Virus record (IMG/VR): IMGVR_UViG_3300020380_000001
Span: 186,001 to 250,000 of that record
Length of the DNA stretch: 64,000 nt
Direction: 5' to 3' (one strand)
Shown in pieces: positions 460-32,402 of the stretch; position 1 is the stretch's first letter, and each line of letters starts with the position of its first letter. Position numbers and translations under genes: made by a program. Under the pieces are notes generated by a model. It was not told the origin of the DNA. It saw only the letters and a program-made list of their open reading frames with translations, and searched no databases.

Positions 460-870
460 TTAACGTGCAGTACGCATAATTGTGGCATAAATTTCTAACA
501 AGTCGTTGAGTTGGAAAACTTCTTCTTGTAGAAAGTCGATTGCTTCCATAGCAACGTCATTGCCGTAGCCTACGCGCTTAGCCCAATCAAAAAAGTACTG
601 CTCAACAGCACGGTATTGATCGTCGCTAGCTGAACCGAAGTTAGTAACACCGAATTGCTTAAGGAAGCGGCCAGGACGGCGGCGTTTCATTTCAGCTGTG
701 ATTTCCCACGCTACGTGAACGATTTGCTCAGGTGAACCATAGTCGCTTGCAGCGTCCATAACTTCGTCAGAATCAAGTGTTGCGCCAGGTAGGGCAGCAA
801 TGTCAGCAGCATATTGGCCAACTTCTGAGTCGTCTTCAGTCATAAGGTTCATAATTTTTCTCATATCCAT
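460..870 (-). CDS. acidic protein with shared N-terminal peptide (putative internal head protein)
   Basis: Starts MDMRKIMNLMTE; RBS GGAG; TAAATA late-type element upstream at about 934-939. Confidence 0.8.
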   Translation of the reverse strand: MDMRKIMNLMTEDDSEVGQYAADIAALPGATLDSDEVMDAASDYGSPEQIVHVAWEITAEMKRRRPGRFLKQFGVTNFGSASDDQYRAVEQYFFDWAKRVGYGNDVAMEAIDFLQEEVFQLNDLLEIYATIMRTAR

Positions 871-1049
871 AAAGCTGTCTCCTTTAAAATGCTAATTGGA
901 ATGTTTGTCGCTTGCATATTTCGCATAACTTACAAGAGTATTTAGTAAAGTTCTATCGTTGTCGATAATTAACGGTTCAATTTACTCTTTTTGTATTACT
1001 ATCTAAAGTAACGTATTTAGTGCCTTGTTACAAAGCAAGCTTCAATTAT

Positions 1050-1250
1050 TTATCGCCTTATCAGTTCTATGCTACATTTTCGCTTTATTTTGGCAGAAAG
1101 TTTTCTTGCTTTAGTCTGTAAGCGATGCCACTCAATGGCAATTTCGTTATCGTGGTCACTTTCTATATGCAACATTCTTTCTTCAAGTTCACCGATGCGA
1201 TCGAAAACTTTGGCTTCTTTCTTAAGCAGTTTCAGGAGTTTATGTGACAT
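1050..1250 (-). CDS. small hypothetical coiled-coil protein
   Basis: 66-aa ORF in the genome's dominant orientation, amphipathic helical composition. Confidence 0.55.
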   Translation of the reverse strand: MSHKLLKLLKKEAKVFDRIGELEERMLHIESDHDNEIAIEWHRLQTKARKLSAKIKRKCSIELIRR

Positions 1251-1265
1251 GATGTGCCTATAATA

Positions 1266-1342
1266 TGGCAGGTGCGGCAGGATTCGAACCTGCGACCCTT
1301 GGCTTAGAAGGCCAATGCTCTATCCAGCTGCGCTACGCACCC
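1266..1342 (-). tRNA. trnR: tRNA-Arg(TCT)
   Basis: Cloverleaf; TTGGC-CTTCTAA-GCCAA anticodon arm; TTCGAAT T-loop; encoded CCA. Confidence 0.95.
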
Positions 1343-1354
1343 ATTAAAGATGGT

Positions 1355-1648
1355 TTAATCAAACGGCCAGTTCGGGTCTCGTTCTGAGAATTCCATCATA
1401 GAGCCATGGAATTCAAGGTTAATTGAACCTACCTTAGCTTCATGGTAAAATATCCCTATCACCGAGTCGTCTTGGTTGTATATCACCTCAACACGGTGCC
1501 CGTCAATTTCTGACTGTTCGATGTCGTCGCTACTAACCTCCATAGTGAGGTCTTCCCAACGACTGTAATTAACTTTTTTGAAGTTTCCGGATTCAGTAAG
1601 TGGCTTACCTTCCATCACGTTCATAAATCCACGCATTGTATCTGACAT
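1355..1648 (-). CDS. protein with shared N-terminal peptide (putative internal head protein)
   Basis: Starts MSDTMRGFMNVMEG; CTAAATAC upstream at about 1674-1681. Confidence 0.8.
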   Translation of the reverse strand: MSDTMRGFMNVMEGKPLTESGNFKKVNYSRWEDLTMEVSSDDIEQSEIDGHRVEVIYNQDDSVIGIFYHEAKVGSINLEFHGSMMEFSERDPNWPFD

Positions 1649-1706
1649 ATTGAGTTATCCTATATAATGTACGTATTTAGTGACAGAGGCTTCTTCACTG
1701 TATAAT

Positions 1707-1868
1707 TCAAAGATTAAAGTAGCGGTTTCTATCTTCAATACTAGGGGTCAGTTTACGCGTGGTTTCGCGAAACTTTTCTTCTTGTTCACGCACACTGCGC
1801 CAAAACTCTAGACCCTCTTCTTTAGTGGGTTCATGTTCAGAAAGTGCTTTCAGTAACTCGTCATCCAT
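1707..1868 (-). CDS. small hypothetical protein (53 aa)
   Basis: Read by hand: MDDELLKALSEHEPTKEEG...; TAATG overlap with the upstream ORF. Confidence 0.55.
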   Translation of the reverse strand: MDDELLKALSEHEPTKEEGLEFWRSVREQEEKFRETTRKLTPSIEDRNRYFNL

Positions 1869-2041
1869 TATTTCGACTCACTCTCGTGTATCTTCTTCCA
1901 CTGTTCAACAGCATCAAAAAACAAGTCACTCACGGCATCAGCGCCGGCATCAGCAATAGATATCATTGTTTCCGAGTCGTTCCACTGCGAAAGCCACTTC
2001 ATGGTTTCATCAAACCATTTAATTTTATCTTCGTCTGTCAT
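1868..2041 (-). CDS. small hypothetical protein
   Basis: Track ORF 1868..2092; the longer start overlaps tRNA-Leu, so MTDEDKIKW at 2041 is preferred. Confidence 0.6.
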   Translation of the reverse strand: MTDEDKIKWFDETMKWLSQWNDSETMISIADAGADAVSDLFFDAVEQWKKIHESESK

Positions 2042-2084
2042 TATGTATACGCCTTTAAAACAGTACACACTTGCAAATTTAATT

Positions 2085-2172
2085 TGGTGCACGGAGTGGG
2101 ACTCGAACCCACACGCCCATTACGGACAGGAGATTTTAAGTCTCCCACGACTACCAATTCCATCACCCGTGC
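2085..2172 (-). tRNA. trnL: tRNA-Leu(TAA)
   Basis: GGAGA-CTTAAAA-TCTCC arm, long variable arm, CCA. Confidence 0.93.
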
Positions 2173-2183
2173 ATGAAAGACAG

Positions 2184-2615
2184 TTAGATAACTGTCTTTG
2201 CGATTGTTGAAGCCGATCTACCGTCGTATAAACCTTCGTGATTAGCTTTAAGGTGCTTCATCACTTGGCCCATATTACAACCTGGGTTGGCTTCTACGAA
2301 TGAAACGATTGTGCCTCTCAGCTCATCTTCATTCATCTGTTTAGGAATGTACCCGTTTACCACATCAAGCTCAAGCTCATAAGCGGCAAGCTCGGATACC
2401 TGATTGCGCTCTTTCATGTTAGTGATAGTTTCATCAATTGACTTGACGAACTTTTTACACATCTGCACTACCTCTGCATCAGTCGATAGACGCTTACCAT
2501 CGTCTAAGCCGATGCGCGAAGCTTCAGAATACAACGTGGTTAAAATACTAACTCTGGCGCTGTCTCGTGCTTTCATAGCTGCCATACGGTCAGCCTTTAT
2601 CTTTTCTATCAACAT
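2184..2615 (-). CDS. GatB/YqeY domain protein
   Basis: MLIEKIKADRMAAMKARD...LLTTLYSE-like N-terminus and MGQVMKHLK...G.YDGRSAS C-terminus are typical of the YqeY family. Confidence 0.85.
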   Translation of the reverse strand: MLIEKIKADRMAAMKARDSARVSILTTLYSEASRIGLDDGKRLSTDAEVVQMCKKFVKSIDETITNMKERNQVSELAAYELELDVVNGYIPKQMNEDELRGTIVSFVEANPGCNMGQVMKHLKANHEGLYDGRSASTIAKTVI

Positions 2616-2632
2616 TTCTATGTTTCCTTCGG

Positions 2633-2863
2633 TTATGTGCCAGCCACCGTGTCGTGGTAAGCGGTGTCGAGTTTCCCGACAACTTTTACTTTCATAATAC
2701 GGTGCGGCGGATAGTGTTCAAAATAATCTTCGCCTTCGGGGTTTTCTGGATTGTGGCGATAGCCAGTTGCAACAATAGCGGAAGAGTGTTCGCGGGCTTT
2801 GCTTTCGTTCGACACGTTGTATTTGAATACTCGGCCGTCGTCGATGTAAACTTGGATTTCCAT
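2633..2863 (-). CDS. hypothetical protein
   Basis: Start at MEIQVYIDDGR, behind a GGAG RBS, within track ORF 2633..2911. Confidence 0.7.
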   Translation of the reverse strand: MEIQVYIDDGRVFKYNVSNESKAREHSSAIVATGYRHNPENPEGEDYFEHYPPHRIMKVKVVGKLDTAYHDTVAGT

Positions 2864-2935
2864 TAGTGTTACTCCGTGTATGTAGAAATGCAGGATCATG
2901 TCGCCAAACACTCACCTGCATTGAGGACAAACTAA

Positions 2936-3268
2936 TTAATAATCGTCGGTAGGATCAAACACAAGATAAGTATAACGGCCGCCATATGCATTCACTGTGT
3001 GAATACGAGCGTATACACCACCCTCGGTGTCTACTCCACGATTACTACCGTATGCTACTTGTACCCGGGATCCGTGCTTGGCTTTCACTTTTTGCAAGTC
3101 ACTGATCAACTCGTCGATGTCATGTGCGCCAGATATTCTGTCGCCTGCATCGTCGTGCGGCACATCTTCGTCGTCATCCGGCATGTCGTAATCTTCGTTT
3201 ACGGCTTTAACTGGCATGCCAGTGTCCGGATCTAGACCTTCTAATATTCTGCGTATGCGCTCTGACAT
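2936..3268 (-). CDS. protein with shared N-terminal peptide variant
   Basis: Starts MSERIRRILEG; acidic; TAAATA upstream at about 3303-3308. Confidence 0.75.
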   Translation of the reverse strand: MSERIRRILEGLDPDTGMPVKAVNEDYDMPDDDEDVPHDDAGDRISGAHDIDELISDLQKVKAKHGSRVQVAYGSNRGVDTEGGVYARIHTVNAYGGRYTYLVFDPTDDY

Positions 3269-3322
3269 ATAAATCTCCTAAATGCTAATCTCAGATATCT
3301 TTATTTAAGCAAGTAGAGAAAA

Positions 3323-3397
3323 TGGTAGAGACACCGTGGGTCGAACACGGAGCACCAGCCTTATGAGGGCCGGGCGAATACCAGCCATTCTGTCTCT
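3323..3397 (-). tRNA. atypical tRNA with CAT anticodon (Met or Ile2)
   Basis: AGAGACA/TGTCTCT acceptor, CTCATAA loop, canonical T arm, CCA; no connector before the D stem; 6-bp anticodon stem. Confidence 0.8.
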
Positions 3398-3403
3398 AGT
3401 ATT

Positions 3404-3493
3404 TGGCGGAGAGTACAGGATTCGAACCTGTGCGCCCCTTTCGGGACTCTCGATTAGCAGTCGAGCGCGATAGACCTACTCTGCCAACTCTCC
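3404..3493 (-). tRNA. trnS: tRNA-Ser(GCT)
   Basis: CTCGA-CTGCTAA-TCGAG arm, long V arm, G73-CCA. Confidence 0.95.
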
Positions 3494-3500
3494 TTTAAAC

Positions 3501-3597
3501 TGGTACCAGGTACGGGATTCGAACCCGCAGGGTCATTATTACAGACCGCGACAAACACTTTAATGATGCCGCGCCTTCCCATTCGGCGCAACCTAGT
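3501..3597 (-). ncRNA. tRNA-like RNA with degenerate anticodon arm (apparent TTA anticodon)
   Basis: 7-bp acceptor, CGCC/GGCG D stem, canonical T arm, A-CCA; weak GGCAT/GTGTT stem around CATTAAA; extra GGTC/GACC arm. Confidence 0.65.
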
Positions 3598-3598
3598 A

Positions 3599-3692
3599 TG
3601 GCGGTGAGGGTGGGATTCGAACCCACGGCCGATGTTGCCACCGACGTTTGATTTCAAGTCAAGTGCAATAAACCAGACTCTGCCACCTCACC
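3599..3692 (-). tRNA. trnS: tRNA-Ser(TGA)
   Basis: TTGA-CTTGAAA-TCAA arm, long V arm, G73-CCA. Confidence 0.95.
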
Positions 3693-3700
3693 ATAAACCT

Positions 3701-3829
3701 TTACAAGCTGTTTATATCAGCTATTGCTTCTTTAAGAGATTCACGCGCACGCTTTTCGCGCTCGAGTTCTTCAACTCTTTTTTCTAGCTTTTTTACAAGC
3801 TTAACAAGATCACCGTGTGTCATTGTCAT
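3701..3829 (-). CDS. small coiled-coil protein (42 aa)
   Basis: Read by hand: MTMTHGDLVKLVKKLEKRVEELERE...; GAGGT RBS. Confidence 0.55.
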   Translation of the reverse strand: MTMTHGDLVKLVKKLEKRVEELEREKRARESLKEAIADINSL

Positions 3830-3848
3830 TGTGAACCTCTATTTAATA

Positions 3849-3886
3849 TGGAGCCGGCCCTGCGATACAACAGGGGATCACCCGGC
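3849..3886 (-). ncRNA. CCA-terminated minihelix (tRNA acceptor mimic or remnant)
   Basis: GCCGG/CCGGC plus CCCTG/CAGGG stems ending T-CCA, spaced like the neighbouring tRNA genes. Confidence 0.45.
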
Positions 3887-3895
3887 ATTGTAAAC

Positions 3896-3970
3896 TGGTA
3901 GGTTAGGTGAGTATCGAACTCACTACAACTGATTTGTAAGAACAGCGCCTCACCTGTCGGCCTCTAACCT
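3896..3970 (-). tRNA. trnV: tRNA-Val(TAC)
   Basis: AGGTTAG/CTAACCT acceptor, CTTACAA loop with one stem mismatch, CCA. Confidence 0.8.
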
Positions 3971-4392
3971 GATGATTTATATTCTCGTAAATACTTGTTT
4001 CTTTTCGAGATCTTTTTATACCTACTACCGGCACCTTTGGCACCCCATGTGTCGGTTTGCGTATGACAATTAGGGCAAAGTAATCTACAATTACTTGGTA
4101 AATTATTGTCACTATCGCCGTCTATGTGATCTAGCTGCAAAGTCAACGGCTTATTGTTCCACATAGTACCGAGGCCGCACTCACTGCATACCGAACCGTA
4201 TTTCTCGACCAAGTATCGTTTAATATTGCCGCCAAGGCCTGCTTCTATTTTGGGAACCTCTTTATTTTCCCAGTCCCATGACAACTTACACTCCAAATCA
4301 CAATACGTGTTGCCTTTTTTATGGGATATATCAGATCCGCAATACCTACAGTGCACTTCTTTCTTTTTTCTGGCACCGGGCCTGTACCTCAC
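3964..4392 (-). CDS. HNH (homing) endonuclease
   Basis: LQLDHIDGDSDNN...CRLLCPNCH motif plus CxxC Zn fingers. Confidence 0.9.
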   Translation of the reverse strand: MRYRPGARKKKEVHCRYCGSDISHKKGNTYCDLECKLSWDWENKEVPKIEAGLGGNIKRYLVEKYGSVCSECGLGTMWNNKPLTLQLDHIDGDSDNNLPSNCRLLCPNCHTQTDTWGAKGAGSRYKKISKRNKYLREYKSSG

Positions 4393-4517
4393 AGATTTGC
4401 CGCACGAGCTTTTATGCCCGATATACTTGTGCCTATTCGTGTAAAACTTCGCCGCAATCGCAAATATATTTTTTCATAAAAATATTTAGCAACTGCCTGA
4501 ATAATCACGTCAAATAA

Positions 4518-4543
4518 GCACTCTGCCTCTGAGCTACGGATCT
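4518..4543 (-). pseudogene. 5' fragment of a tRNA gene (acceptor 5' strand plus D arm)
   Basis: AGATCCG-TA-GCTC-AGAGGCA-GAGT with no anticodon arm, T arm or matching 3' strand nearby. Confidence 0.45.
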
Positions 4544-4550
4544 ATAATTC

Positions 4551-4847
4551 TTAAACTGCTTCGTGTGTAAACTTACACATAACTCGGTAGAATACCTGCG
4601 TTGCAGCATACTTGTCGATATTGTCAAGAAACATTTGGAAGAACTTCTTCTCTGTGTCACTATTGTCCATAGCAACTGCTCTATTCAAAGTAGCTACGTA
4701 TGTTTCCCTAGGAATCAACATAAAGTTTGCGTATTCTACACGACCCCATTCAATTAACTGCTTAAATGTTTCGGGGTCTAACTCTGCTTTAAGCTCGTTG
4801 ACGCGCTCTGTAAGCTCGTCTATGAAGTTATTCTTGTAATCTTCCAT
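4551..4847 (-). CDS. hypothetical protein
   Basis: 98-aa ORF; promoter-like TATAGA/TTGTAA upstream. Confidence 0.65.
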   Translation of the reverse strand: MEDYKNNFIDELTERVNELKAELDPETFKQLIEWGRVEYANFMLIPRETYVATLNRAVAMDNSDTEKKFFQMFLDNIDKYAATQVFYRVMCKFTHEAV

Positions 4848-4966
4848 AATGTTACTCGTTAAGTTTTAATCTATAATAGCACGTCTGTAGAAGCTTACAA
4901 GAATAATTTCTAATTTATTTAAAAATAAAAAAGTGCCAAAGTAATTACTACAATGACACCTTAAAA

Positions 4967-5039
4967 TGGTTGCGGGTACAGGTAACGATCCTGCCGGTCC
5001 TGGGTTATGAGCCCTGGCTGAACACCGTGTTCACCCGCG
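4967..5039 (-). tRNA. atypical initiator-like tRNA-Met(CAT)
   Basis: C1:A72 mismatch and three consecutive G-C pairs closing CTCATAA (fMet hallmarks); ATCGTTA T-loop; no connector. Confidence 0.8.
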
Positions 5040-5053
5040 ATAGATTTAAAAAT

Positions 5054-5132
5054 TGGTTGCAAGGGCGGGATTTGAACCCGCGTCCGCTAGGGTTATGAGC
5101 CCTGCCATCTGCCAGACTGATTGTACCTTACT
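5054..5132 (-). tRNA. initiator-like tRNA-Met(CAT)
   Basis: 1:72 mismatch, GGG-CTCATAA-CCC, canonical T arm, CCA. Confidence 0.85.
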
Positions 5133-5138
5133 ATTGTT

Positions 5139-5216
5139 TGGCACACCCTCCAGGATTCGAACCTGGGACCTTCGCGTTCGTAGCACGACATTCTAATCCA
5201 ACTGAACTAAGGGTGC
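5139..5216 (-). tRNA. trnR: tRNA-Arg(ACG)
   Basis: CGTG-CTACGAA-CGCG arm; CCA. Confidence 0.95.
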
Positions 5217-5225
5217 AATAAACTT

Positions 5226-5720
5226 TTAATCATTTTCGTCAAGAAGGATATCTGTTATAATCTCTTCAAATGCGTGGTAGTCTTCCATACCATCCCAATT
5301 GCCTTCGTTATAAAAAATATCCGTTGTTAGTGATACTATCTCGCGGCGACGGTTACGCGGTAATGCCTTCCATTCATCTATCGAAGTAACGCCTTCTCTG
5401 CGCAAGGTTGACAAAATAGCAACAGAAAAACTGTCGTCATTGTTGCCTGCCTTATTAGTATCACTTAGCACCGAATCTATCATATCAGCAAACATTGCTG
5501 AATCCGGCATCGCTTCATCGTCAATCCAACCATGATTGTAAAACAAGTCACTAGCTAGATCACCGTAGCGATATTTTTCGCGTCTTGATAACGCGTTCCA
5601 GTCAGCTAGCGTGTTGATATTATCACGAGCTAACATTTGTAACACACCCGACTTAACAGCGGCATCGCTGCCGCTAGTGTCTTCCATCAAGTTCATAAAT
5701 TTGCGCATCTGATCTGACAT
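5226..5720 (-). CDS. acidic protein with shared N-terminal peptide; internal duplication
   Basis: Starts MSDQMRKFMNLMED; two copies of an L.R..I.T...W.AL.R..R....L..D.FY..G.W unit. Confidence 0.8.
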   Translation of the reverse strand: MSDQMRKFMNLMEDTSGSDAAVKSGVLQMLARDNINTLADWNALSRREKYRYGDLASDLFYNHGWIDDEAMPDSAMFADMIDSVLSDTNKAGNNDDSFSVAILSTLRREGVTSIDEWKALPRNRRREIVSLTTDIFYNEGNWDGMEDYHAFEEIITDILLDEND

Positions 5721-5729
5721 AAATGTTCC

Positions 5730-6209
5730 TTATTTGATCTGCAATATGCTTGCCGCCTGTCGTAGCGCGACTTCGCGCATCGCTTGCGACTTGTATCTTT
5801 CTTGCATAAAACTCAAAAGTTGATTTATGCCATCTTCAAAATCATCATACGCAGAGTCAGGGTCACCAACACCATAAGCACCGATGATAACACCGTTAGC
5901 AAAGTATTCACCGTCTTCTGCTATTTCAAGAACCTCGGCTTCTTCTTTAGCTTGAGCAGCGTTAATAACCTTAGTAGCAAACTCGTACGGAGCCATAGCG
6001 CCATATGATAAGAGTTGCTTGCCTACTTTTTGCGTATAAGACTCTACTGAACCTTGTTCTATACCGTATATTAACGCTGACGCTTTATCGTAAAACTGAT
6101 CAACTGATATAGCATCAGAGTTTTCCGTAATAGCTGTGTCAATATTTTGATTCAATGGCCCGGACTGACCTTCCATTAAATTCATTATTTTGCGCATCTG
6201 ATCTGACAC
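5730..6209 (-). CDS. protein with shared N-terminal peptide
   Basis: Starts MSDQMRKIMNLMEG; GGAG RBS; GTAAATAAG upstream. Confidence 0.8.
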   Translation of the reverse strand: MSDQMRKIMNLMEGQSGPLNQNIDTAITENSDAISVDQFYDKASALIYGIEQGSVESYTQKVGKQLLSYGAMAPYEFATKVINAAQAKEEAEVLEIAEDGEYFANGVIIGAYGVGDPDSAYDDFEDGINQLLSFMQERYKSQAMREVALRQAASILQIK

Positions 6210-6256
6210 TTAATATCTCCCATAAACTATTGTATAGCTTATTTACGCATTTAAGT

Positions 6257-6333
6257 TGGAAGGGGTGGCAGGATTCGAACCTGCGAGTACCGGGATCAAA
6301 GCCCGGGGCCTTAGACCGCTTGGCGACACCCCT
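6257..6333 (-). tRNA. trnQ: tRNA-Gln(TTG)
   Basis: CCGGG-CTTTGAT-CCCGG arm; CCA. Confidence 0.93.
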
Positions 6334-6339
6334 ACAAAC

Positions 6340-6415
6340 TGGTCTCTCGAGCAGGATTTGAACCTGCGACACGTAGTCCCAAACCACGCATGTTACCAGA
6401 CTACACTATCGAGAG
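6340..6415 (-). tRNA. trnP: tRNA-Pro(TGG)
   Basis: CGTGG-TTTGGGA-CTACG arm; CCA. Confidence 0.93.
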
Positions 6416-6424
6416 AATCAAAAC

Positions 6425-6502
6425 TGGTTGTCCCTGCTGGATTTGAACCAGCGATCAGCGATTATCAGTCGCACGCTTTAGGCCAGGCTAAGCTAAGGGA
6501 CA
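6425..6502 (-). tRNA. trnI: tRNA-Ile(GAT)
   Basis: GCGA-CTGATAA-TCGC arm; CCA. Confidence 0.93.
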
Positions 6503-6510
6503 ATAAACTT

Positions 6511-7353
6511 TTATCGTTTACGTAGAGTAATCTCAACACCTTTAATTGCATTGAGTTCATCTACGATTTGCTGAGGATCTACCTCTATGTCAGTACGACG
6601 TCTAGGCACATACTCGATGTCTCTACCTATTAATTGAATACGTTTAGGCAAAACACGCAATATAAACGGACCACCAACCTGTAGATTTCTATTAGTTAGG
6701 TCATAGTAATAACCGAGCATTTTGAGCGCTTTCGCTACTTCGTCCGATACTACCTGTTTTTTCACCTGTTTTGATGGTTTGTCCGAAACAATATACTCTT
6801 CTGCGGGTGTTTCGTCGTCGTACTCAAGTGCTAGCTCAACCACATTTTTTACGTGTTTCTTTGCAATAAACAAAACACCGTCGTCCATGTCATGCTCTAC
6901 GTCATCTAATTCAAGATCCGAAACAAGCCCAGCGATTTCACTTGCTGTCCATCCAGGCATAGTCAGTTGTACCATTTTACGCTTGGACTCTCTGACTGTC
7001 TTTTTCGGTCCGTTGCCTTGACTAGCATAATACTTGCTGAACTCTTCGTCAGCATATTCGGCCATTTGCTCAATGAAATCCCAGCGAGGGCCATCTTCAG
7101 CATATGCCAAATCCGGAACTATTTTTGTCAGCACTTCGTTTTCAACTGCTGACTCATCATCATCTAGAATTGCACGGGTCAAGTCATGTAAGCGATCTCT
7201 GTCGTCACCAAACAACTCGTTACCAGCGTCATGTGCCATACCATCCAATTTAGACATCAAGCGGCCGAAAACATGTCTTTTTGCTTTCTTGTGTCGCTCG
7301 TCACCAGTTGGTGACTCCATCAAATTCATTAATTCGCGCATTTTTTCTGACAT
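6511..7353 (-). CDS. acidic protein with shared N-terminal peptide
   Basis: Starts MSEKMRELMNLMES; GTAAATAAG upstream; upstream 30 bp resembles that of 5730..6209. Confidence 0.8.
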   Translation of the reverse strand: MSEKMRELMNLMESPTGDERHKKAKRHVFGRLMSKLDGMAHDAGNELFGDDRDRLHDLTRAILDDDESAVENEVLTKIVPDLAYAEDGPRWDFIEQMAEYADEEFSKYYASQGNGPKKTVRESKRKMVQLTMPGWTASEIAGLVSDLELDDVEHDMDDGVLFIAKKHVKNVVELALEYDDETPAEEYIVSDKPSKQVKKQVVSDEVAKALKMLGYYYDLTNRNLQVGGPFILRVLPKRIQLIGRDIEYVPRRRTDIEVDPQQIVDELNAIKGVEITLRKR

Positions 7354-7400
7354 TACTGTCTCCTATAAACTATGTCATATAGCTTATTTACGCAGGTAAT

Positions 7401-7500
7401 TGGTGGACCCCCGCGGACTTGCACCACACGCCTCAATACTACCCTCACTTTATTTCTTTTAAGACACCGGATTTACAGTCCGGGGTGAGGAAAGGGATCC
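7401..7500 (-). ncRNA. rearranged tRNA-Tyr(GTA)-like RNA lacking a D arm
   Basis: GGATCCC/GGGGTCC acceptor plus A-CCA; perfect CCGGA-CTGTAAA-TCCGG arm; CCTCAC/GTGAGG helix replaces the D arm. Confidence 0.7.
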
Positions 7501-7523
7501 TTAATCTGTTACAAAAACTGTTT

Positions 7524-7547
7524 TGGAAGGGGTCGTTACCAACCCCT
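7524..7547 (-). ncRNA. CCA-terminated microhelix
   Basis: AGGGGTT-GGTAAC-GACCCCT-T-CCA; no U-tract on either strand. Confidence 0.35.
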
Positions 7548-7561
7548 CAATAAAACAATTC

Positions 7562-8053
7562 TTAAAAGTGCGGGTTTTTGTCATTGTGAACACCGCGTGC
7601 AAGCGTCCAAATGCCTGCTCGTTTATATGTAGCAGTGTTGCCTTTACGCCAAAATACTGTACCGTCGCTTGTTGTAACTTTCTTCATAGTTTTAGAAATC
7701 TTGACAATTGTACCGCACGGATACCAGTCACCGTTAAAACCGTAACTTACTACGTCACCAATCTTTGGCATGCGCTCTACTGCATGATCATCGTGACGCT
7801 CTACAGCAATATAAGTATCACCGGTTTCTTCACTCAACTGCTCAGCGATTCGTTGCGCAATAAAGCTAGAGCCACAATAATTAAGGGTAACAAACTGGGC
7901 CATTATTTCTTTGTAGAAGTTCGGCGCTTTTTCTTCATCGCCACCTGCCATCTTTAGCGCAGTTTCACGGACTTCTTCAGCCCATGCTTCAGTGTAGTCT
8001 TCGTTACGATCAATAATGTTACCAGTTTTTAAATCTACTCTATAATGTATCAT
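7562..8053 (-). CDS. hypothetical early protein
   Basis: 163-aa ORF behind a repeated promoter cassette. Confidence 0.75.
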   Translation of the reverse strand: MIHYRVDLKTGNIIDRNEDYTEAWAEEVRETALKMAGGDEEKAPNFYKEIMAQFVTLNYCGSSFIAQRIAEQLSEETGDTYIAVERHDDHAVERMPKIGDVVSYGFNGDWYPCGTIVKISKTMKKVTTSDGTVFWRKGNTATYKRAGIWTLARGVHNDKNPHF

Positions 8054-8141
8054 AATTTGCTACCTTGTGTTTGTTTAATCAACCTACACAGACATAATAG
8101 CAGAATGACATTCAAGTACAAGACTTGTTTGAAAATAATTT
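8051..8141 (-). repeat. promoter-leader cassette, copy 1
   Basis: About 90 bp, near-identical to 9506..9600 and similar to 24741..24843 (+). Confidence 0.85.
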
Positions 8142-8153
8142 AAAATATATTTT

Positions 8154-8239
8154 GCACAGCGGACGGGTTTCGAACCCGCAATGCGATATTCGCGCTGCCT
8201 TGAAAGGGCAGTGACTTTACCAGTTTGTCCACCGCTGTG
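8154..8239 (-). tRNA. trnE: tRNA-Glu(TTC) with long variable arm, no encoded CCA
   Basis: CTGCC-CTTTCAA-GGCAG arm; 15-nt V region CGCGAATATCGCATT. Confidence 0.85.
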
Positions 8240-8310
8240 GAAAATATACTTATTCTGGGCAAAAATAAAGCGACTTAATAGCCGCTTTATCATGGCATTA
8301 AGGTTTGTTA

Positions 8311-9021
8311 CTATGCGCGTCTACGAACAGCGATTCCTAGTACTGCTAAAAGCGCAAGTGCTAATGAACCTGGCTCCGGTACCGCTGTTACACCACCTAA
8401 CTGTAAATCATATGAACGCTGCATTAGCCCAGTATCAGGCGATGCAATATTACCGCGCACTTGGATGGCTCCGATGTTTGTGAAGTCAGTGTTACTAAAT
8501 TCACGCGAAAGGAAAAACGCATCACGTCCTGGGCGATTAACACCGGGTATCGGTAACTCAACAGTTTCAGCAGTTCCGTTAGGACCTGACCAAAACGTTA
8601 CGTCAAACCAAGCATTCAAATCTGATTCAATAATCGTTGTAATAAATTTTATCGGGTTGCCAATTGCAGTTAAGTCAAGTCCGCCTAAGCCGAATGGATT
8701 AATTGCATTTGATCCGTCAACGCCGTCCCATTGAATGGTAAACATTGATTCGTTACCTGCGCCTGAACTAAAGAAAAAGTTATCAGCCGCTACGTTTACA
8801 GAGGCGCCTTGGTTGAACTCGTCAACAACGCTTGTTATTTCTAAATCTCGTTCTCCGCCGATCATAGAACCCAATACAGAGCTAAACAAAGTTTGGCCTT
8901 GCATTACTACCATTGGTCCTTGGTCATCAGAAAAGTCATCAATCGTTATCATACCTGCGTTGGCTGAGGTAGTAATACCCATGGCCAATACAGCGCCTAA
9001 CAATAGAGATTTCATTTTCAT
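8311..9021 (-). CDS. PEP-CTERM sorting-domain surface protein
   Basis: Sec signal peptide ending SANA; C-terminal VPEPGS + hydrophobic TM + RRRA. Confidence 0.93.
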   Translation of the reverse strand: MKMKSLLLGAVLAMGITTSANAGMITIDDFSDDQGPMVVMQGQTLFSSVLGSMIGGERDLEITSVVDEFNQGASVNVAADNFFFSSGAGNESMFTIQWDGVDGSNAINPFGLGGLDLTAIGNPIKFITTIIESDLNAWFDVTFWSGPNGTAETVELPIPGVNRPGRDAFFLSREFSNTDFTNIGAIQVRGNIASPDTGLMQRSYDLQLGGVTAVPEPGSLALALLAVLGIAVRRRA

Positions 9022-9068
9022 ATAAATGATCCTTTTAAAGTTATCCAGTTGCTTTTAGCAACACATAC

Positions 9069-9096
9069 ACTATACATTACTTTTTTACAAGGTCAA
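9069..9096 (-). promoter_or_regulatory. sigma70-like promoter for the PEP-CTERM gene
   Basis: TTGACC-16-TATAGT. Confidence 0.65.
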
Positions 9097-9229
9097 GAAG
9101 TTTCTTTAATTCGTAAAACAGTATTTAATAGGCATGTATGAATAACACACGATTTTGACCTCTTATTCACAAAAAGCCAAAATCGTGTGTTATGCGATGA
9201 CCATAATGATCACCGCGCTACACTACTAA

Positions 9230-9508
9230 TTATTTTTGCAAATCGTAATATTCGTACTCATAACGACCACCTTCGATCTCGCCCCACTGCTCCCAGCCGT
9301 TCTTTGAAACATGCATTGTGTTCGCGGCGTGCTCAGGAGTAATGATAAAACGTACATCAAAACCAGCAGCGTGTGCCTCAGCTTTTACACTTTCAAAGTC
9401 TTCAGCGCTGTGTGCAGCACCGTGCCATACGTTTTCAGTTGCGCCTACCATTTCTTCAGCGCTGTTCCAGTTCGCTACTACAAAACTTGTTGCTTTACGA
9501 TTGTTCAT
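9230..9508 (-). CDS. hypothetical early protein
   Basis: 92-aa ORF behind the repeated cassette. Confidence 0.7.
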   Translation of the reverse strand: MNNRKATSFVVANWNSAEEMVGATENVWHGAAHSAEDFESVKAEAHAAGFDVRFIITPEHAANTMHVSKNGWEQWGEIEGGRYEYEYYDLQK

Positions 9509-9600
9509 AATTTGCTACCTTGTGTTTGTTTAATCAACCTACACAGATATAATAGCAAAATGACATCCAAACACAAGGCCTTTTTGAAAATAATTTCAAA
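9506..9600 (-). repeat. promoter-leader cassette, copy 2
   Basis: See 8051..8141. Confidence 0.85.
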
Positions 9601-9685
9601 AATATTTCGTTGCTCTGGGTACTTATATTAGTCGCTTTTAAACTCATGTGTTTATCATCTCGCAAAATGGCAAACATATAAGTTT

Positions 9686-9770
9686 TGGTGGGTTGGGTGG
9701 GATTCGAACCCACGAAGCATTACGCGCTAGATTAAAAGTCTAGTATCTTTAACCACTCGATCACCAACCC
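9686..9770 (-). tRNA. trnK: tRNA-Lys(TTT) on a class II (Tyr-like) body
   Basis: CTAGA-CTTTTAA-TCTAG arm; 13-nt V region CGCGTAATGCTTC; A73-CCA. Confidence 0.88.
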
Positions 9771-9803
9771 ATATCGTTTTCGTACTTTCGTCTTTCGTTT
9801 CAT
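9732..9803 (-). CDS. Lys/Arg-rich 23-aa leader ORF running into tRNA-Lys
   Basis: AGGAGA RBS + MKRKTKVRKRYGLVIEWLKILDF; the stop is the TAA in the anticodon loop. Confidence 0.4.
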   Translation of the reverse strand: MKRKTKVRKRYGLVIEWLKILDF

Positions 9804-9838
9804 TTTCTTTCTCCTGTTAATTATACGAGTGTAGTATG

Positions 9839-9912
9839 CAGGGACGACGGGACTTGAACCCGCGCTCTCCGCAGTGACAGTGCGATATTTTAACCAACTA
9901 AACTACGCCCCT
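9839..9912 (-). tRNA. trnD: tRNA-Asp(GTC), no encoded CCA, flanked by a 13-bp inverted repeat
   Basis: CGCA-CTGTCAC-TGCG arm; flanks 9827..9839 and 9913..9925 are perfectly complementary. Confidence 0.88.
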
Positions 9913-9936
9913 GCATACTACACTCATATCTTTATT

Positions 9937-10488
9937 TTAATATAACGAGTCTTCTACGATTTCAAACAAGTCATTATACATAGCTGAAGCCATTGCATTA
10001 AACTCGTCGTAAGCGCCATCAGCAAAAAAATCACTATACAACATATGTGCATCGCCTTTATTGTCACGTACTGACTTTGACACGTACTGTAACGAGCGAG
10101 GCTTAAAGTGCGACATCTTTTGCAATCTAGGTTCCGGCGGGAAAGCACGCATTTCAATATCAATTGAGTCATCGCCTTCCTGATAAAACACTAACATTTT
10201 AAGAACTGTATTCGCGTTCCAGTTAGTTTTTATCGGCTTAAACTTGATAGTGAAGCCTTCTTTACCAGCTTGAGGAACATCGTCGCCTTGTAGTACGTCG
10301 ACACCCATATCAGCAATCTCATCTAACCAAGTGTTCATACCACTAACGATTTGTTCACGGAACTTGCTGTATTGTTCTCTGAATCCGGCAGCGTCGCTTT
10401 CCATTAATCTGAAAACCTTTTCCATACCGGAATTTTGTCCTGTTTTTTTCCCTTCAAGGATTTTGTTAACTCGATTTCGGTCAGCCAT
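9937..10488 (-). CDS. protein with variant shared N-terminal peptide
   Basis: MADRNRVNKILEG...MEKVFRLMES; ATAAATAG upstream. Confidence 0.75.
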   Translation of the reverse strand: MADRNRVNKILEGKKTGQNSGMEKVFRLMESDAAGFREQYSKFREQIVSGMNTWLDEIADMGVDVLQGDDVPQAGKEGFTIKFKPIKTNWNANTVLKMLVFYQEGDDSIDIEMRAFPPEPRLQKMSHFKPRSLQYVSKSVRDNKGDAHMLYSDFFADGAYDEFNAMASAMYNDLFEIVEDSLY

Positions 10489-10566
10489 GTTTAGTATTCT
10501 CCTGTTATCCGTTATCGTTACTATTTATCCAATAACTTAAGAGCGTACAAAACCAATAACCAAAAT

Positions 10567-10658
10567 TGGCGGACGGTGCTGGATTTGAACCAGCGCGGGG
10601 GATATTCTCCACCTCCGGGTTAACAGCCCGGCGCAATCGGCCACTATGCGAACCGCCC
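10567..10658 (-). tRNA. trnN: tRNA-Asn(GTT) on a class II (Ser-like) body
   Basis: CCGGG-CTGTTAA-CCCGG arm; 20-nt V region; G73-CCA; G3:U70 pair. Confidence 0.88.
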
Positions 10659-10674
10659 ATAAACTTTTAAAGTT

Positions 10675-10750
10675 TGGTGGAGTATACCAGACTCGAACTG
10701 GTCAGGCTATCATCTTGCAAGGATGATCCGGGTGCCCATGCCCATACCCC
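10675..10750 (-). tRNA. trnA: tRNA-Ala(TGC), atypical D region
   Basis: G3:U70; ATCATC-CTTGCAA-GATGAT 6-bp arm; CCA. Confidence 0.88.
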
Positions 10751-10758
10751 ATTAAACT

Positions 10759-10833
10759 TGGTGCCGAGTGGTGGTACCGCCCCACCCTCTAAGGATTTTC
10801 AATCCATCGCTAATCTGTCTCAGCTAACTCGGC
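10759..10833 (-). tRNA. trnF: tRNA-Phe(GAA), non-canonical T and D loops
   Basis: GCCGAGT/ACTCGGC acceptor; TTGAAAA loop; T-loop GGCGGTA. Confidence 0.85.
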
Positions 10834-10838
10834 TAAAT

Positions 10839-10912
10839 TGGTGCCGGCGGAGAGAATCGAACTCCCGTAGACGCATTACAAGTGCGCTGCATGGCCACTG
10901 TGCTACGCCGGC
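10839..10912 (-). tRNA. trnT: tRNA-Thr(TGT)
   Basis: CGCA-CTTGTAA-TGCG arm; CCA. Confidence 0.93.
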
Positions 10913-10935
10913 TGAATATCTGTCTAAATACATTC

Positions 10936-11012
10936 TGGGGTAATAGACGGGCAACGATCCCGCATCTTCCAGGGTCACATCCTGGGGCTCTGCCATTTGA
11001 GCTACTATCACC
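10936..11012 (-). tRNA. trnH: tRNA-His(GTG)
   Basis: G-1:C73; CCAGG-ATGTGAC-CCTGG arm; T-loop ATCGTTG; CCA paired with the leader (CATTCTGG/CCAGAATG). Confidence 0.9.
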
Positions 11013-11131
11013 CCAGAATGCACTTTCGTACATACTGGGTTCTGTTTTAACGCTAGAACCAGCGTTTAGACCAGATATAAGTTTATATCCAAATTGTTAA
11101 AGAACGTTTCGACTCCTACGGAGTCCAGGCA

Positions 11132-11159
11132 TAAAAAAAGCAGCCTGTTGGCTGCCTTT
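11132..11159 (-). terminator. intrinsic terminator
   Basis: GCAGCC-loop-GGCTGC hairpin followed by a U-tract on the minus strand. Confidence 0.7.
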
Positions 11160-11182
11160 ATGCTTTTCAATTTCGTACGAGG

Positions 11183-11440
11183 TTAGATAATCTCTTTCTC
11201 GTCTAATTGCATAAAGGCAGTGTTAAAATCTTGATACTCTGGTTTATGATTCGTTTGATTATTATCATCCGACGCAATTCCAGATTCACGGATACTTCTT
11301 GTCGCGTTTACCGGAGCATACGATTTTTCGTTGCTTGGCATGATAAACGTTTCTTCACTACGTGGAATTTCAGCTACAACTACGCGTGGTGGCGTAATGT
11401 CGCTTAATTCTTTTGTTGATGTAGTAATAAATGTTGCCAT
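11183..11440 (-). CDS. hypothetical protein
   Basis: 85-aa ORF, GAGGA RBS, CTAAATAA upstream. Confidence 0.7.
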   Translation of the reverse strand: MATFITTSTKELSDITPPRVVVAEIPRSEETFIMPSNEKSYAPVNATRSIRESGIASDDNNQTNHKPEYQDFNTAFMQLDEKEII

Positions 11441-32385: not shown

Positions 32386-32402
32386 TCTTATCCCTTATAA
32401 GA

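What the first reader, a model, noticed from the sequence alone, without database searches (positions are those of the whole stretch)
460..10488. Seven late-promoter proteins with a shared N-terminal leader ending in L-x-E (putative capsid-targeting sequence)
Seen: MDMRKIMNLMTE, MSDTMRGFMNVMEG, MSERIRRILEG, MSDQMRKFMNLMED, MSDQMRKIMNLMEG, MSEKMRELMNLMES and MADRNRVNKILEG. The bodies are unrelated and acidic, and most have a TAAATA element upstream. Established: T4 internal proteins carry a 10-aa capsid-targeting sequence cleaved after [LI]-x-E by the prohead protease, and T4 IPI inhibits the GmrSD restriction enzyme. Inference: a family of packaged, injected proteins, candidate anti-defence factors, interleaved with the tRNA genes.
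Basis: partly seen in the sequence, partly recalled or inferred. Interest (0 to 1): 0.6.

Follow-up and report, generated by a model that had tools for sequence, protein, structure and literature searches.

The report
Capsid-targeting-like leaders in jumbo phage
An uncultivated 306-kb marine phage with a T4-type head carries seven small acidic orphan genes among its tRNA genes. They share a short N-terminal tag that looks like the T4 signal for loading proteins into the capsid, which makes this a plausible but untested new example of a known trick.

Summary
Seven minus-strand ORFs between 460 and 10488 start with a related leader. Five carry a near-identical 13-residue leader (MS[DE]xMRx[FIL]MN[LV]ME), which occurs nowhere else in the 306.5-kb genome. 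g3 and g7 carry shorter variants ending I-L-E|G. The bodies are unrelated, acidic and have no relatives outside this lineage. Six genes have an oriented TAAATA about 31-39 nt upstream (74 nt for g1). The seventh, g4, abuts g5.

The capsid-targeting reading is the best explanation, but it is only inferred. The genome encodes a T4 gp21-type prohead protease and a gp23-type capsid protein. The scaffold-position protein has the highest [LIM]-x-E density of all ORFs (23 sites against 6.9 expected). The capsid protein has L-x-E sites where T4 gp23 is cut. Leader codons vary synonymously while the residues stay fixed. Sister genomes swap or insert modules directly behind the leader. In T4 itself, ipI, ipII and ipIII flank the tRNA cluster on one strand.

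Differences from T4: the leader has no sequence similarity to the T4 CTS, and the cargo is acidic rather than basic.

Packaging, cleavage and injection are untested. Nothing supports an anti-defence role.

Verdict: a new member of a known kind, of moderate interest.

The parts
460..870 (-). g1, 136 aa, leader MDMRKIMNLMTE|DD; body after the leader has pI 4.3
   Evidence: ORF; leader profile hit, 15.0 bits; charge; an ortholog is present in sister phage L007
939..944 (-). CTAAATA late-promoter-like motif, 74 nt upstream of g1 (atypically far)
1355..1648 (-). g2, 97 aa, leader MSDTMRGFMNVME|G (V at P3); a second site PLTE|S lies at residue 19
   Evidence: (29.0 bits)
1674..1679 (-). CTAAATA motif 31 nt upstream of g2
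2936..3268 (-). g3, 110 aa, short leader variant MSERIRRILE|G. The sister ortholog has the same body but a different N-terminus, MSDYMRSLMDAIGDE
3302..3307 (-). TTAAATA motif 39 nt upstream of g3
5226..5720 (-). g4, 164 aa, leader MSDQMRKFMNLME|D. It has no promoter motif of its own and starts 9 nt after the g5 stop. In the AF2 model the leader is a helix (residues 3-13), followed by a low-confidence linker and an all-helical body
   Evidence: (28.7 bits)
5730..6209 (-). g5, 159 aa, GTG start, leader MSDQMRKIMNLME|G
   Evidence: (27.3 bits)
6240..6245 (-). GTAAATAAGCTATA motif 36 nt upstream of g5. It is part of a promoter+RBS+leader cassette of about 92 bp that is shared with g6
6511..7353 (-). 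g6, 280 aa, leader MSEKMRELMNLME|S. Relatives keep the leader and the C-terminal domain but exchange the modules behind the leader
   Evidence: (22.6 bits)
7385..7390 (-). GTAAATAAGCTATA motif 37 nt upstream of g6
9937..10488 (-). g7, 183 aa, leader variant MADRNRVNKILE|G with a second site RLME|S at residue 30. The whole cassette (9931-10565) is absent from the sister phage and lies exactly between tRNA-Asp and tRNA-Asn
10522..10527 (-). ATAAATA motif 39 nt upstream of g7
1266..11011 (-). tRNA gene array interleaved with the leader genes: 17 tRNA genes by ARAGORN in the window, part of a 23-gene array at genome 172956-197011

Best explanation
The seven genes encode cargo proteins of the phage head. 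Their short amphipathic N-terminal leader acts like the T4 capsid targeting sequence.

Proposed mechanism:
1. Late in infection the genes are transcribed from TAAATA-type late promoters.
2. The leader docks the proteins onto the scaffolding core (gp22-like, gp67-like and gp68-like proteins) while the prohead assembles.
3. The gp21-type prohead protease then cuts after the glutamate of the hydrophobic-x-E motif. This falls at residue 13 in the core members and residue 10 or 12 in g3 and g7.
4. The acidic mature proteins stay in the head with the DNA and enter the host at the next infection.

The conserved promoter+leader cassette also serves as a recombination handle, so new bodies can be placed behind the tag.

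Shown here: the leader family itself, the protease and capsid homologs, the motif statistics, the module exchange, and the T4 synteny. Inferred: docking, cleavage, packaging and injection. What the cargo does in the host is unknown. Anti-defence is one possibility with no specific support.
For: - Leader family: it is found only at these ORF starts in the whole genome. The bodies are unrelated.
- Selection on the peptide: R6 is encoded CGT/CGC/AGA, N10 AAC/AAT and L11 TTG/TTA/CTT, while the residues stay fixed.
- Head machinery: Peptidase_S77 (T4 gp21) at genome 9439-10074, 87.9 bits. Gp23-type capsid protein, 257.7 bits. Gene order is portal, small core proteins, protease, 371-aa protein, capsid protein.
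- Cleavage-motif signature: the 371-aa scaffold-position protein has 23 [LIM]-x-E sites against 6.9 expected from its own composition. This is the highest density among 374 ORFs, p about 1e-9. The protease ranks fifth.
- Capsid protein: its N-terminus has ALLE|G, VVLE|N and ALRE|S. The mature T4 gp23* N-terminus aligns to about residue 31.
- Late genes in general: with the seven excluded, an N-proximal [LIM]-x-E occurs in 33% of TAAATA-preceded genes against 15% of the others (Fisher p=0.002). The D, K and Q controls are flat.
- Promoter motif: 71 TAAATA in the sense orientation against 18 antisense in the 15-90 nt upstream windows, with a peak at 30-39 nt. The motif stands in front of head-module genes. 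Aeh1 late promoters are CTAAATA and T4's are TATAAATA (PMC1524935).
- Modularity: g6 relatives keep the leader but swap the modules behind it. g3 has a different leader in the sister phage. g7 is a clean cassette insertion.
- T4 precedent: propeptides of 10-19 residues target otherwise diverse internal proteins to the core and are removed by gp21 (PMC9026906; PMC3012670).
- T4 synteny: ipI, the tRNA cluster with the segB endonuclease, then ipIII and ipII, all on one strand.
- Structure hints: in the g4 AF2 model (mean pLDDT 69) the leader is a helix at residues 3-13, followed by a low-confidence linker. Its helical hydrophobic moment is at or above that of the T4 CTS.
Against: - There is no experimental evidence of cleavage or virion presence. 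The phage is uncultivated.
- The leader has no sequence similarity to the T4 CTS MKTYQEFIAE.
- The cargo is acidic (pI 4.2-5.0), whereas T4 IPs are basic (pI 8.9-9.5). Acidic proteins are less obviously suited to sharing a capsid with DNA.
- g1 (L-M-T-E), g2 (V-M-E) and the sister g3 ortholog (L-M-D, I-G-D-E) depart from strict L/I-x-E.
- [LIM]-x-E is a low-information motif that occurs by chance in about 15% of N-termini.
- The closest cultured relative, PA5oct (67% capsid protein identity), has no such shared leader family.
- The complex prediction of protease plus leader gave no verdict.
- T4 gp55 was not found by a single-sequence search, which is uninformative.
- The g1 promoter motif lies atypically far upstream, at 74 nt.
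Confidence: 0.6

Rival explanations
1. The genes are a fast-diverging paralog family made by local duplication. The N-terminal peptide is kept for some other common function, such as binding one host or phage hub protein or acting as an N-degron for the phage's Lon-like protease. The proteins are not packaged.
For: g4 and g5 are adjacent, with leaders 82% identical over 17 residues. The g5 and g6 promoter+leader cassettes match at 80-84% over about 92 bp. The genome encodes a Lon-like ATP-dependent protease at window 58326-60581. The acidic cargo is unlike T4 internal proteins.
Against: The bodies show no detectable relationship to each other, and modules are swapped behind a constant leader in relatives. 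That pattern fits a portable tag better than divergence of one ancestral protein. The leader ends in the motif that saturates the scaffold-position protein. The genes carry the late-promoter motif shared with head genes. The T4 ip genes occupy the equivalent genomic position.
Confidence: 0.2
2. The conserved element works at the nucleic-acid level. It is a promoter, ribosome-binding and initiation-region cassette that gives strong late expression and mediates modular shuffling, and the peptide it encodes is incidental.
For: The g5 and g6 upstream regions are nearly identical (GCGTAAATAAGCTATA...TAGTTTATRGGAGA) and continuous with the leader. Indels between the sister genomes lie at cassette boundaries. 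Mobile regulatory cassettes that mediate shuffling are known in T4-type hyperplastic regions (PMC2839356).
Against: At the degenerate leader positions the codons differ while the residues are fixed (R6, N10, L11). g1 and g2 share the peptide but not the upstream DNA. Selection therefore acts on the peptide. A recombination role is compatible with the best explanation and is included in it.
Confidence: 0.1
3. Only the five core genes form a real family. g3 and g7 resemble it by chance, and the whole set has no common function.
For: g3 and g7 are not found by the leader profile, and their pairwise matches are insignificant. Looser versions of the motif occur at the N-termini of unrelated phage proteins, including a RegA and a RecT-like protein.
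Against: The sister-phage ortholog of g3 begins with the canonical MSDYMRSLM. g3 and g7 share with the core genes the I-L-E|G ending, the TAAATA at 39 nt, acidic bodies and the position between tRNA genes.
Confidence: 0.1

Closest known systems
Phage T4 internal proteins IPI, IPII, IPIII (and Alt) with the capsid targeting sequence (CTS)
   Same: - A short N-terminal propeptide is shared by otherwise unrelated small proteins.
- It ends in hydrophobic-x-Glu.
- The genome encodes a gp21-type (Peptidase_S77) protease and a gp22/gp67-type core.
- The leader is duplicated almost verbatim between adjacent genes (T4 ipII and ipIII are identical at the DNA level; g4 and g5 here).
- The genes sit on the same strand as, and next to, the tRNA cluster, which also holds a homing endonuclease.
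   Different: - The leader is 13 residues (MSDQMRKFMNLME) with no sequence similarity to MKTYQEFIAE.
- There are seven or more members rather than three or four.
- The cargo is acidic (pI 4.2-5.0), whereas T4's is basic (pI 8.9-9.5).
- The genes are interleaved with the tRNAs rather than flanking them.
- The phage is a 306-kb marine jumbo phage nearest to PA5oct, not a member of the Straboviridae.
- Nothing has been shown experimentally.
Propeptide-bearing ejection and inner-body proteins of phiKZ-like giant phages (phiKZ, 201phi2-1, SPN3US)
   Same: Head-internal proteins are processed after Glu by a T4-related prohead protease. Diverged paralogs can keep identical N-termini (SPN3US gp53 and gp54), which has been read as CTS-like (PMC5694885).
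   Different: The cleavage motif there is A/S/G-x-E and most propeptides exceed 100 residues. Here the motif is L/I/M/V-x-E and the leader is 10-13 residues, as in T4. The head genes here are much closer to T4 and PA5oct.
Pseudomonas phage PA5oct (Arenbergviridae), the closest cultured relative by capsid protein (67% identity)
   Same: The head module has the same order (portal, small core proteins, protease, scaffold-position protein, capsid protein). The PA5oct virion protein EST35_0150, detected by mass spectrometry, starts MKINDIITE|G. Two further genes of this genome start the same way: MKINQIITE|T and MRIDEIINE|S.
   Different: PA5oct has no shared MSDxMRxxMNLME-type leader family and no homologs of the seven bodies.
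Hyperplastic regions and mobile regulatory cassettes of T4-type genomes
   Same: The region holds ORFan genes, and indels between near-identical genomes are bounded by repeated regulatory cassettes (PMC2839356).
   Different: The cassettes here carry a late-type TAAATA motif plus a coding leader. The published ones carry an early promoter with a stem-loop.

Membership tests
T4-type CTS-bearing internal head proteins | A short (10-19 residue) N-terminal propeptide shared by proteins whose mature parts are unrelated | tested here: met
   The leader is 13 residues in g1, g2, g4, g5 and g6, and 10-12 residues in g3 and g7. Similarity is confined to the first 13-24 residues.
T4-type CTS-bearing internal head proteins | The propeptide ends at the gp21 cleavage motif L/I-x-E | tested here: inconclusive
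   The motif is exact in g3-g7 (L-M-E or I-L-E). g2 has V-M-E and g1 has L-M-T-E. The sister g3 ortholog has L-M-D / I-G-D-E. The true specificity of this phage's protease is only inferred.
T4-type CTS-bearing internal head proteins | The genome encodes a gp21-type prohead protease and a scaffolding core | tested here: met
   Peptidase_S77 scores 87.9 bits. A 371-aa protein lies between the protease and the capsid protein and has 23 [LIM]-x-E sites. An acidic gp67-like protein starts MNKLEQVFDLLINE|D.
T4-type CTS-bearing internal head proteins | Sequence similarity of the leader to the T4 CTS (MKTYQEFIAE / MKTFKEF...) | tested here: not met
   The T4 leaders were read from NC_000866. The format is alike but the sequences are not.
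T4-type CTS-bearing internal head proteins | Proteolytic removal of the leader and presence of the mature protein in virions | not testable with these tools
   The phage is uncultivated and no proteome is available. The complex prediction gave no verdict.
T4-type CTS-bearing internal head proteins | The leader alone is sufficient to package a foreign protein | not testable with these tools
   This needs an experiment (a leader-reporter fusion).
T4-type CTS-bearing internal head proteins | Small basic mature proteins thought to associate with the packaged DNA (a property of T4 IPI-III, not strictly defining) | tested here: not met
   The mature bodies have pI 4.2-5.0 and net charge -8 to -17. 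T4 IPs have pI 8.9-9.5.
T4-type CTS-bearing internal head proteins | Late-gene expression together with the head genes | tested here: inconclusive
   An oriented, positioned TAAATA stands upstream of six of the seven genes and of head-module genes. RNA-library contigs cover g4-g6 but cannot show transcript starts or exclude DNA. gp55 was not found by a single-sequence search.
IPI*-like anti-restriction (GmrSD inhibitor) or other known anti-defence proteins | Homology or fold similarity to a known anti-defence protein | tested here: not met
   No hit in Pfam, PHROGs or NCBIfam reaches a curated cut-off or matches a family of known function. There are no tblastn hits in GenBank phages for g4 and g6. 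Foldseek against the PDB found no match for the g4 model. g6 has no relatives outside its lineage among 1.84 billion representatives.

The most novel reading that the evidence does not exclude
The 13-residue leader MS[DE]xMRx[FIL]MN[LV]ME is a previously unrecognised, portable capsid-loading tag of a widespread marine jumbo phage lineage. Through it the phage packages and injects a changeable set of seven to ten acidic orphan proteins, some of which could be DNA-mimic-like inhibitors of host defences. New cargo would be acquired by recombination at the promoter+leader cassette within the tRNA array.
Probability: 0.3. Interest if true: 0.65.

Novelty: new member of a known kind. Interest (0 to 1): 0.45.

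Why it matters
If the leader is a working capsid-targeting tag, the T4 internal-protein principle extends to the PA5oct-like jumbo phages, an uncultivated marine lineage seen in metagenomes of at least ten studies.

It would define a short peptide that could be tested as a packaging tag. It would also mark seven or more orphan proteins as the first phage products to enter the host, which makes them natural candidates for takeover or counter-defence functions.

The shared position of tagged genes and tRNA genes in T4 and in this phage suggests that this region is an old, conserved site for acquiring injected cargo.

Tried and rejected
- **Cultured relatives.** A near-identity DNA search of the region against GenBank phages found nothing. 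tblastn of g6 and g4 against the same collection found nothing.
- **Family scans.** Pfam, PHROGs and NCBIfam scans of the seven proteins gave no hit that reaches a curated cut-off or matches a family of known function.
- **Word searches.** Searches with g6, g4 and g7 found only same-lineage proteins. The exhaustive search with g6 found the same. The protein atlas gave no usable hit.
- **Complex prediction.** The prohead protease with g5 residues 1-36 scored 0.00, with no verdict. This is not evidence either way.
- **Folds.** The AF2 model of g4 (pLDDT 69) found no Foldseek match in the PDB. The AF2 model of g5 (pLDDT 42) was unusable.
- **Is the leader widespread?** A relaxed DNA pattern found about 97 IMG/VR loci, many at N-termini. 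Two were giant phages that also encode Peptidase_S77. One hit family is RegA and another is RecT-like, and none is annotated as a virion protein. I therefore treat these as mostly coincidental.
- **Exact leader in metagenomes.** The exact-leader pattern found only near-identical genomes of the same lineage.
- **PA5oct.** A scan for shared N-termini found none of this type.
- **gp55.** T4 gp55 used as a query on this genome found nothing, which is uninformative.
- **Generic signals.** The sigma-70 promoter and intrinsic terminator scans were at chance level overall.
- **Secretion signal.** A Sec or Tat signal reading is rejected from the sequence itself: the leader is charged and amphipathic, not hydrophobic.


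Full report
**1. What is there**

The window is bases 186001-250000 of a 306.5-kb IMG/VR virus record with direct terminal repeats and 43% G+C.

- g1, 460-870
- g2, 1355-1648
- g3, 2936-3268
- g4, 5226-5720
- g5, 5730-6209 (GTG start)
- g6, 6511-7353
- g7, 9937-10488

I built a profile from the five near-identical leaders (M-S-[DE]-x-M-R-x-[FIL]-M-N-[LV]-M-E; g1 lacks the Ser and reads ...NLMTE). Searched against every stop-to-stop frame of the whole genome, it found only those five ORF starts (15-29 bits). The next hit scored 3.5 bits.

g3 (MSERIRRILE|G) and g7 (MADRNRVNKILE|G) are shorter variants and are not significant by sequence alone. g3 is tied to the family because its ortholog in a sister genome starts MSDYMRSLM.

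All-against-all BLAST shows similarity only in the first 13-24 residues. The bodies after the putative cleavage site have pI 4.2-5.0 and net charge -8 to -17. Five of the seven fall below pI 4.5, against 15% of all ORFs in the genome.

No hit in Pfam, PHROGs or NCBIfam reaches a curated cut-off or matches a family of known function.

**2. The surroundings**

The genes lie inside a 24-kb array of tRNA genes, all on the minus strand. ARAGORN finds 23 at genome 172956-197011, and Rfam adds three more. Non-leader genes in the array include a YqeY-like protein, an HNH endonuclease and a PEP-CTERM protein.

Six of the seven genes have TAAATA upstream, at 31-39 nt (74 nt for g1). g4 starts 9 nt after g5 ends and has none.

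Genome-wide, TAAATA occurs 71 times in the sense orientation within 15-90 nt upstream of ORF starts. Its reverse complement occurs 18 times there, and other hexamers of the same composition 27-41 times. There is a sharp peak of 32 at 30-39 nt.

The motif stands in front of head-module genes and is most often CTAAATA. T4 late promoters are TATAAATA with a weakly conserved first T. Those of Aeromonas phage Aeh1 are CTAAATA (PMC1524935). 'Late promoter' is therefore a reasonable inference, but it has not been shown.

**3. Which phage, and does it have the required machinery?**

The genome encodes a Peptidase_S77 (T4 gp21) prohead protease (87.9 bits) and a Gp23-family capsid protein (257.7 bits).

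The head module has T4-like order: portal, a 90-aa protein, an acidic 167-aa gp67-like protein, the protease, a 371-aa protein in the scaffold position, and the capsid protein.

The capsid protein is closest to Pseudomonas phage PA5oct (67% identity), followed by further jumbo phages of about 310-470 kb infecting Escherichia, Salmonella, Vibrio and Sinorhizobium. PA5oct has the same module order.

**4. Is hydrophobic-x-Glu the cleavage motif in this phage?**

Three independent lines say it probably is.
- The scaffold-position protein has 23 [LIM]-x-E sites in 371 residues. Its own composition predicts 6.9, and the genome-wide frequency is 1.29% (p about 1e-9). This is the highest density among 374 ORFs, and the protease itself ranks fifth. 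T4 gp22 is likewise cut to small fragments by gp21 (PMC9026906).
- The capsid protein N-terminus carries ALLE|G, VVLE|N and ALRE|S. Alignment to the mature T4 gp23* chains places the T4 maturation site near residue 31.
- With the seven genes left out, an N-proximal [LIM]-x-E (residues 7-20) occurs in 33% of TAAATA-preceded genes against 15% of the rest (Fisher p=0.002). The same test with D, K or Q in place of E is flat.

**5. Is the leader a peptide signal or a DNA element?**

At the degenerate positions the codons differ between paralogs (Arg CGT/CGC/AGA, Asn AAC/AAT, Leu TTG/TTA/CTT) while the residues are fixed. Amino-acid changes are limited to positions 7, 8 and 11. Selection therefore acts on the peptide.

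The leader has a helical hydrophobic moment at or above that of the T4 CTS. In the g4 AF2 model (mean pLDDT 69) it is a helix at residues 3-13, followed by a low-confidence linker. The g5 model was too poor to use. This is weak evidence.

**6. Comparative evidence for a portable tag**

Near-complete sister genomes of 307-311 kb occur in IMG/VR and in marine metagenome assemblies. The phage's DNA is held by marine runs from ten studies.

Over the first 12 kb the window and the sister are 92-98% identical and differ by four indels:
- a 53-aa ORF (1705-1868);
- the HNH endonuclease (3971-4541);
- 34 bp replaced by 289 bp directly behind the g6 leader (7288-7321);
- the complete g7 cassette (9931-10565), which sits exactly between tRNA-Asp and tRNA-Asn.

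A more distant g6 relative (58% identity) keeps the leader (MSEQMRNMMNLVE|D) and the C-terminal domain but has another middle module. g3 has the same body but a different leader in the sister. The promoter+leader cassettes of g5 and g6 cross-match at 80-84% over about 92 bp.

g6 has no relatives outside this lineage among 1.84 billion cluster representatives. g4 and g7 have none in the word search.

**7. Comparison with T4, read from its record**

In NC_000866 the order is ipI, trna.4-2, eight tRNA genes with the segB homing endonuclease, rnaD and rnaC, e.8-e.2, nudE, e, ipIII and ipII. All lie on one strand.

ipII and ipIII share MKTYQEFIAE, identical even at the DNA level. ipI starts MKTFKEF...ITE|A.

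The association of tagged head-cargo genes with the tRNA cluster, and with an endonuclease among the tRNAs, is therefore shared with T4.

The published account states that 10-19-residue propeptides target IPs to the core. Residues 4 and 7 matter for targeting and residues 8 and 10 for processing. [quoted passage not shown]

The differences here are these:
- there is no sequence similarity between the leaders;
- there are seven or more members;
- the cargo is acidic, whereas T4's is basic (pI 8.9-9.5).

**8. Mechanism proposed**

1. Late transcription from the TAAATA sites (inferred).
2. Docking of the amphipathic leader on the assembling core (inferred by analogy).
3. Cleavage after the leader Glu by the S77 protease (inferred from the motif statistics).
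4. Retention in the head and injection into the host (inferred by analogy).

The cargo's function is unknown. Anti-defence is possible, and acidity allows a DNA-mimic idea, but no result supports it. I put the packaging and cleavage model at about 0.6.

**9. Rivals**

- A diverging paralog family whose N-terminus serves another purpose, such as a hub-binding motif or a degron for the phage Lon-like protease at 58326-60581.
- A purely nucleic-acid cassette. The synonymous variation argues against this.
- g3 and g7 are not true family members.

Details are in the Rival explanations section.

**10. Things that led nowhere**

- The protease-leader complex prediction gave no verdict.
- Foldseek found nothing for g4.
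- A relaxed leader pattern found many N-terminal singletons in other viral contigs, including two giant phages that also encode the S77 protease. Some of these are RegA and RecT-like proteins, so I treat the wider recurrence as mostly coincidence.
- PA5oct has no comparable leader family.
- RNA-library contigs from three studies cover g4-g6 in the sister form. Contigs cannot show transcript starts or exclude DNA carry-over.

**11. Further candidates outside the reported coordinates (not proven)**

Within the tRNA array, upstream of the window:
- genome 175385-175855, MFDKITKSAKLME|S;
- genome 179004-179270, MKNQDFKQIALLLE|SPGD;
- genome 184536-184742.

All three are preceded by TAAATA.

A second leader type, M[KR]I[ND][QE]II.E, occurs at genome 31909 and 70323.

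**12. Verdict**

It is a new member of a known kind, namely CTS-tagged internal proteins of a T4-type head, in a PA5oct-like marine jumbo phage. Interest is moderate.

Noticed in passing
window 8311-9021 (-): A 236-aa phage-encoded protein with an N-terminal signal-like segment and a C-terminal PEP-CTERM sorting motif (Pfam PF07589, 25.1 bits). It is conserved in the sister phage and is covered by contigs from RNA libraries. PEP-CTERM proteins normally depend on a host exosortase, so this is an unusual phage gene and a possible clue to the host.
   Followed up: partly
window 3501-3597 (-): ARAGORN calls a 97-nt tRNA with anticodon TTA (an ochre-suppressor type) between two tRNA-Ser genes. Rfam did not report it at the gathering score. 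The standard code gives long ORFs throughout the genome, so it is not evidence of recoding.
   Followed up: no
window 3964-4392 (-), indel 3971-4541: An HNH endonuclease gene lies inside the tRNA array. It is absent from the otherwise 92%-identical sister genome, which suggests a recent homing-type insertion. T4 has segB in the equivalent place among its tRNA genes.
   Followed up: partly
window 2184-2615 (-): A YqeY-like (GatB/YqeY domain) protein is encoded among the tRNA genes (Pfam PF09424, E=5.6e-20).
   Followed up: no
window 11646-11619 (-): A perfect sigma-70 consensus promoter (TTGACA, 16 nt, TATAAT; 12 of 12) sits at the upstream end of the tRNA and leader-gene array. It could drive early, host-polymerase transcription of the tRNAs, while the leader genes have their own TAAATA motifs.
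   Followed up: no
window 30092-31213 and 31213-32385 (-); also G000 116174-116914 and 116917-117645: Four genes share an identical 14-residue N-terminus (MPIKFTGPVKP[RK]KL) and a second conserved block about 20 residues further in. They lie near tail-fibre-like genes and are probably paralogous fibre or receptor-binding proteins with a common attachment domain.
   Followed up: no
G000 31909-32469, 70323-70643 and 8529-8801 (outside the window); L014 3063-3284: A second N-terminal type is present: MKINQIITE|T, MRIDEIINE|S and MRIDEIYD.... It matches the start of PA5oct EST35_0150 (MKINDIITE|G), a 73-aa protein of the head module that was detected in virions by mass spectrometry. This may be another targeting leader class.
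   Followed up: partly
G000 10089-11204 (outside the window): The scaffold-position protein has the highest [LIM]-x-E density of all ORFs (23 sites against 6.9 expected). This is a genomic signature that could be used to infer prohead protease specificity in uncultivated T4-type phages.
   Followed up: yes
window 58326-60581 (-): A 751-aa Lon-like ATP-dependent protease (phrog_4871, E=2e-203).
   Followed up: no
window 22708-23988 (-) and 14713-21123 (-): An RCC1-repeat-like protein (PHROG 'regulator of chromosome condensation' families, E about 1e-36) lies close to a 2136-aa ORF.
   Followed up: no
L012 4072-5220 (also L008, L011, L013): An unrelated AT-rich phage lineage has a protein of more than 380 aa that starts MEKVLLKEINKMRRLMNLME|VEDIE, with the same MRxLMNLME core 11 residues in. 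It has no PHROG match, and no S77 protease was found on the incomplete contig.
   Followed up: partly
P0002: A fragment 95% identical to the g6 C-terminus is deposited under a MAG labelled Glaciecola sp. This is either a host hint (Alteromonadaceae) or a binning artefact.
   Followed up: no
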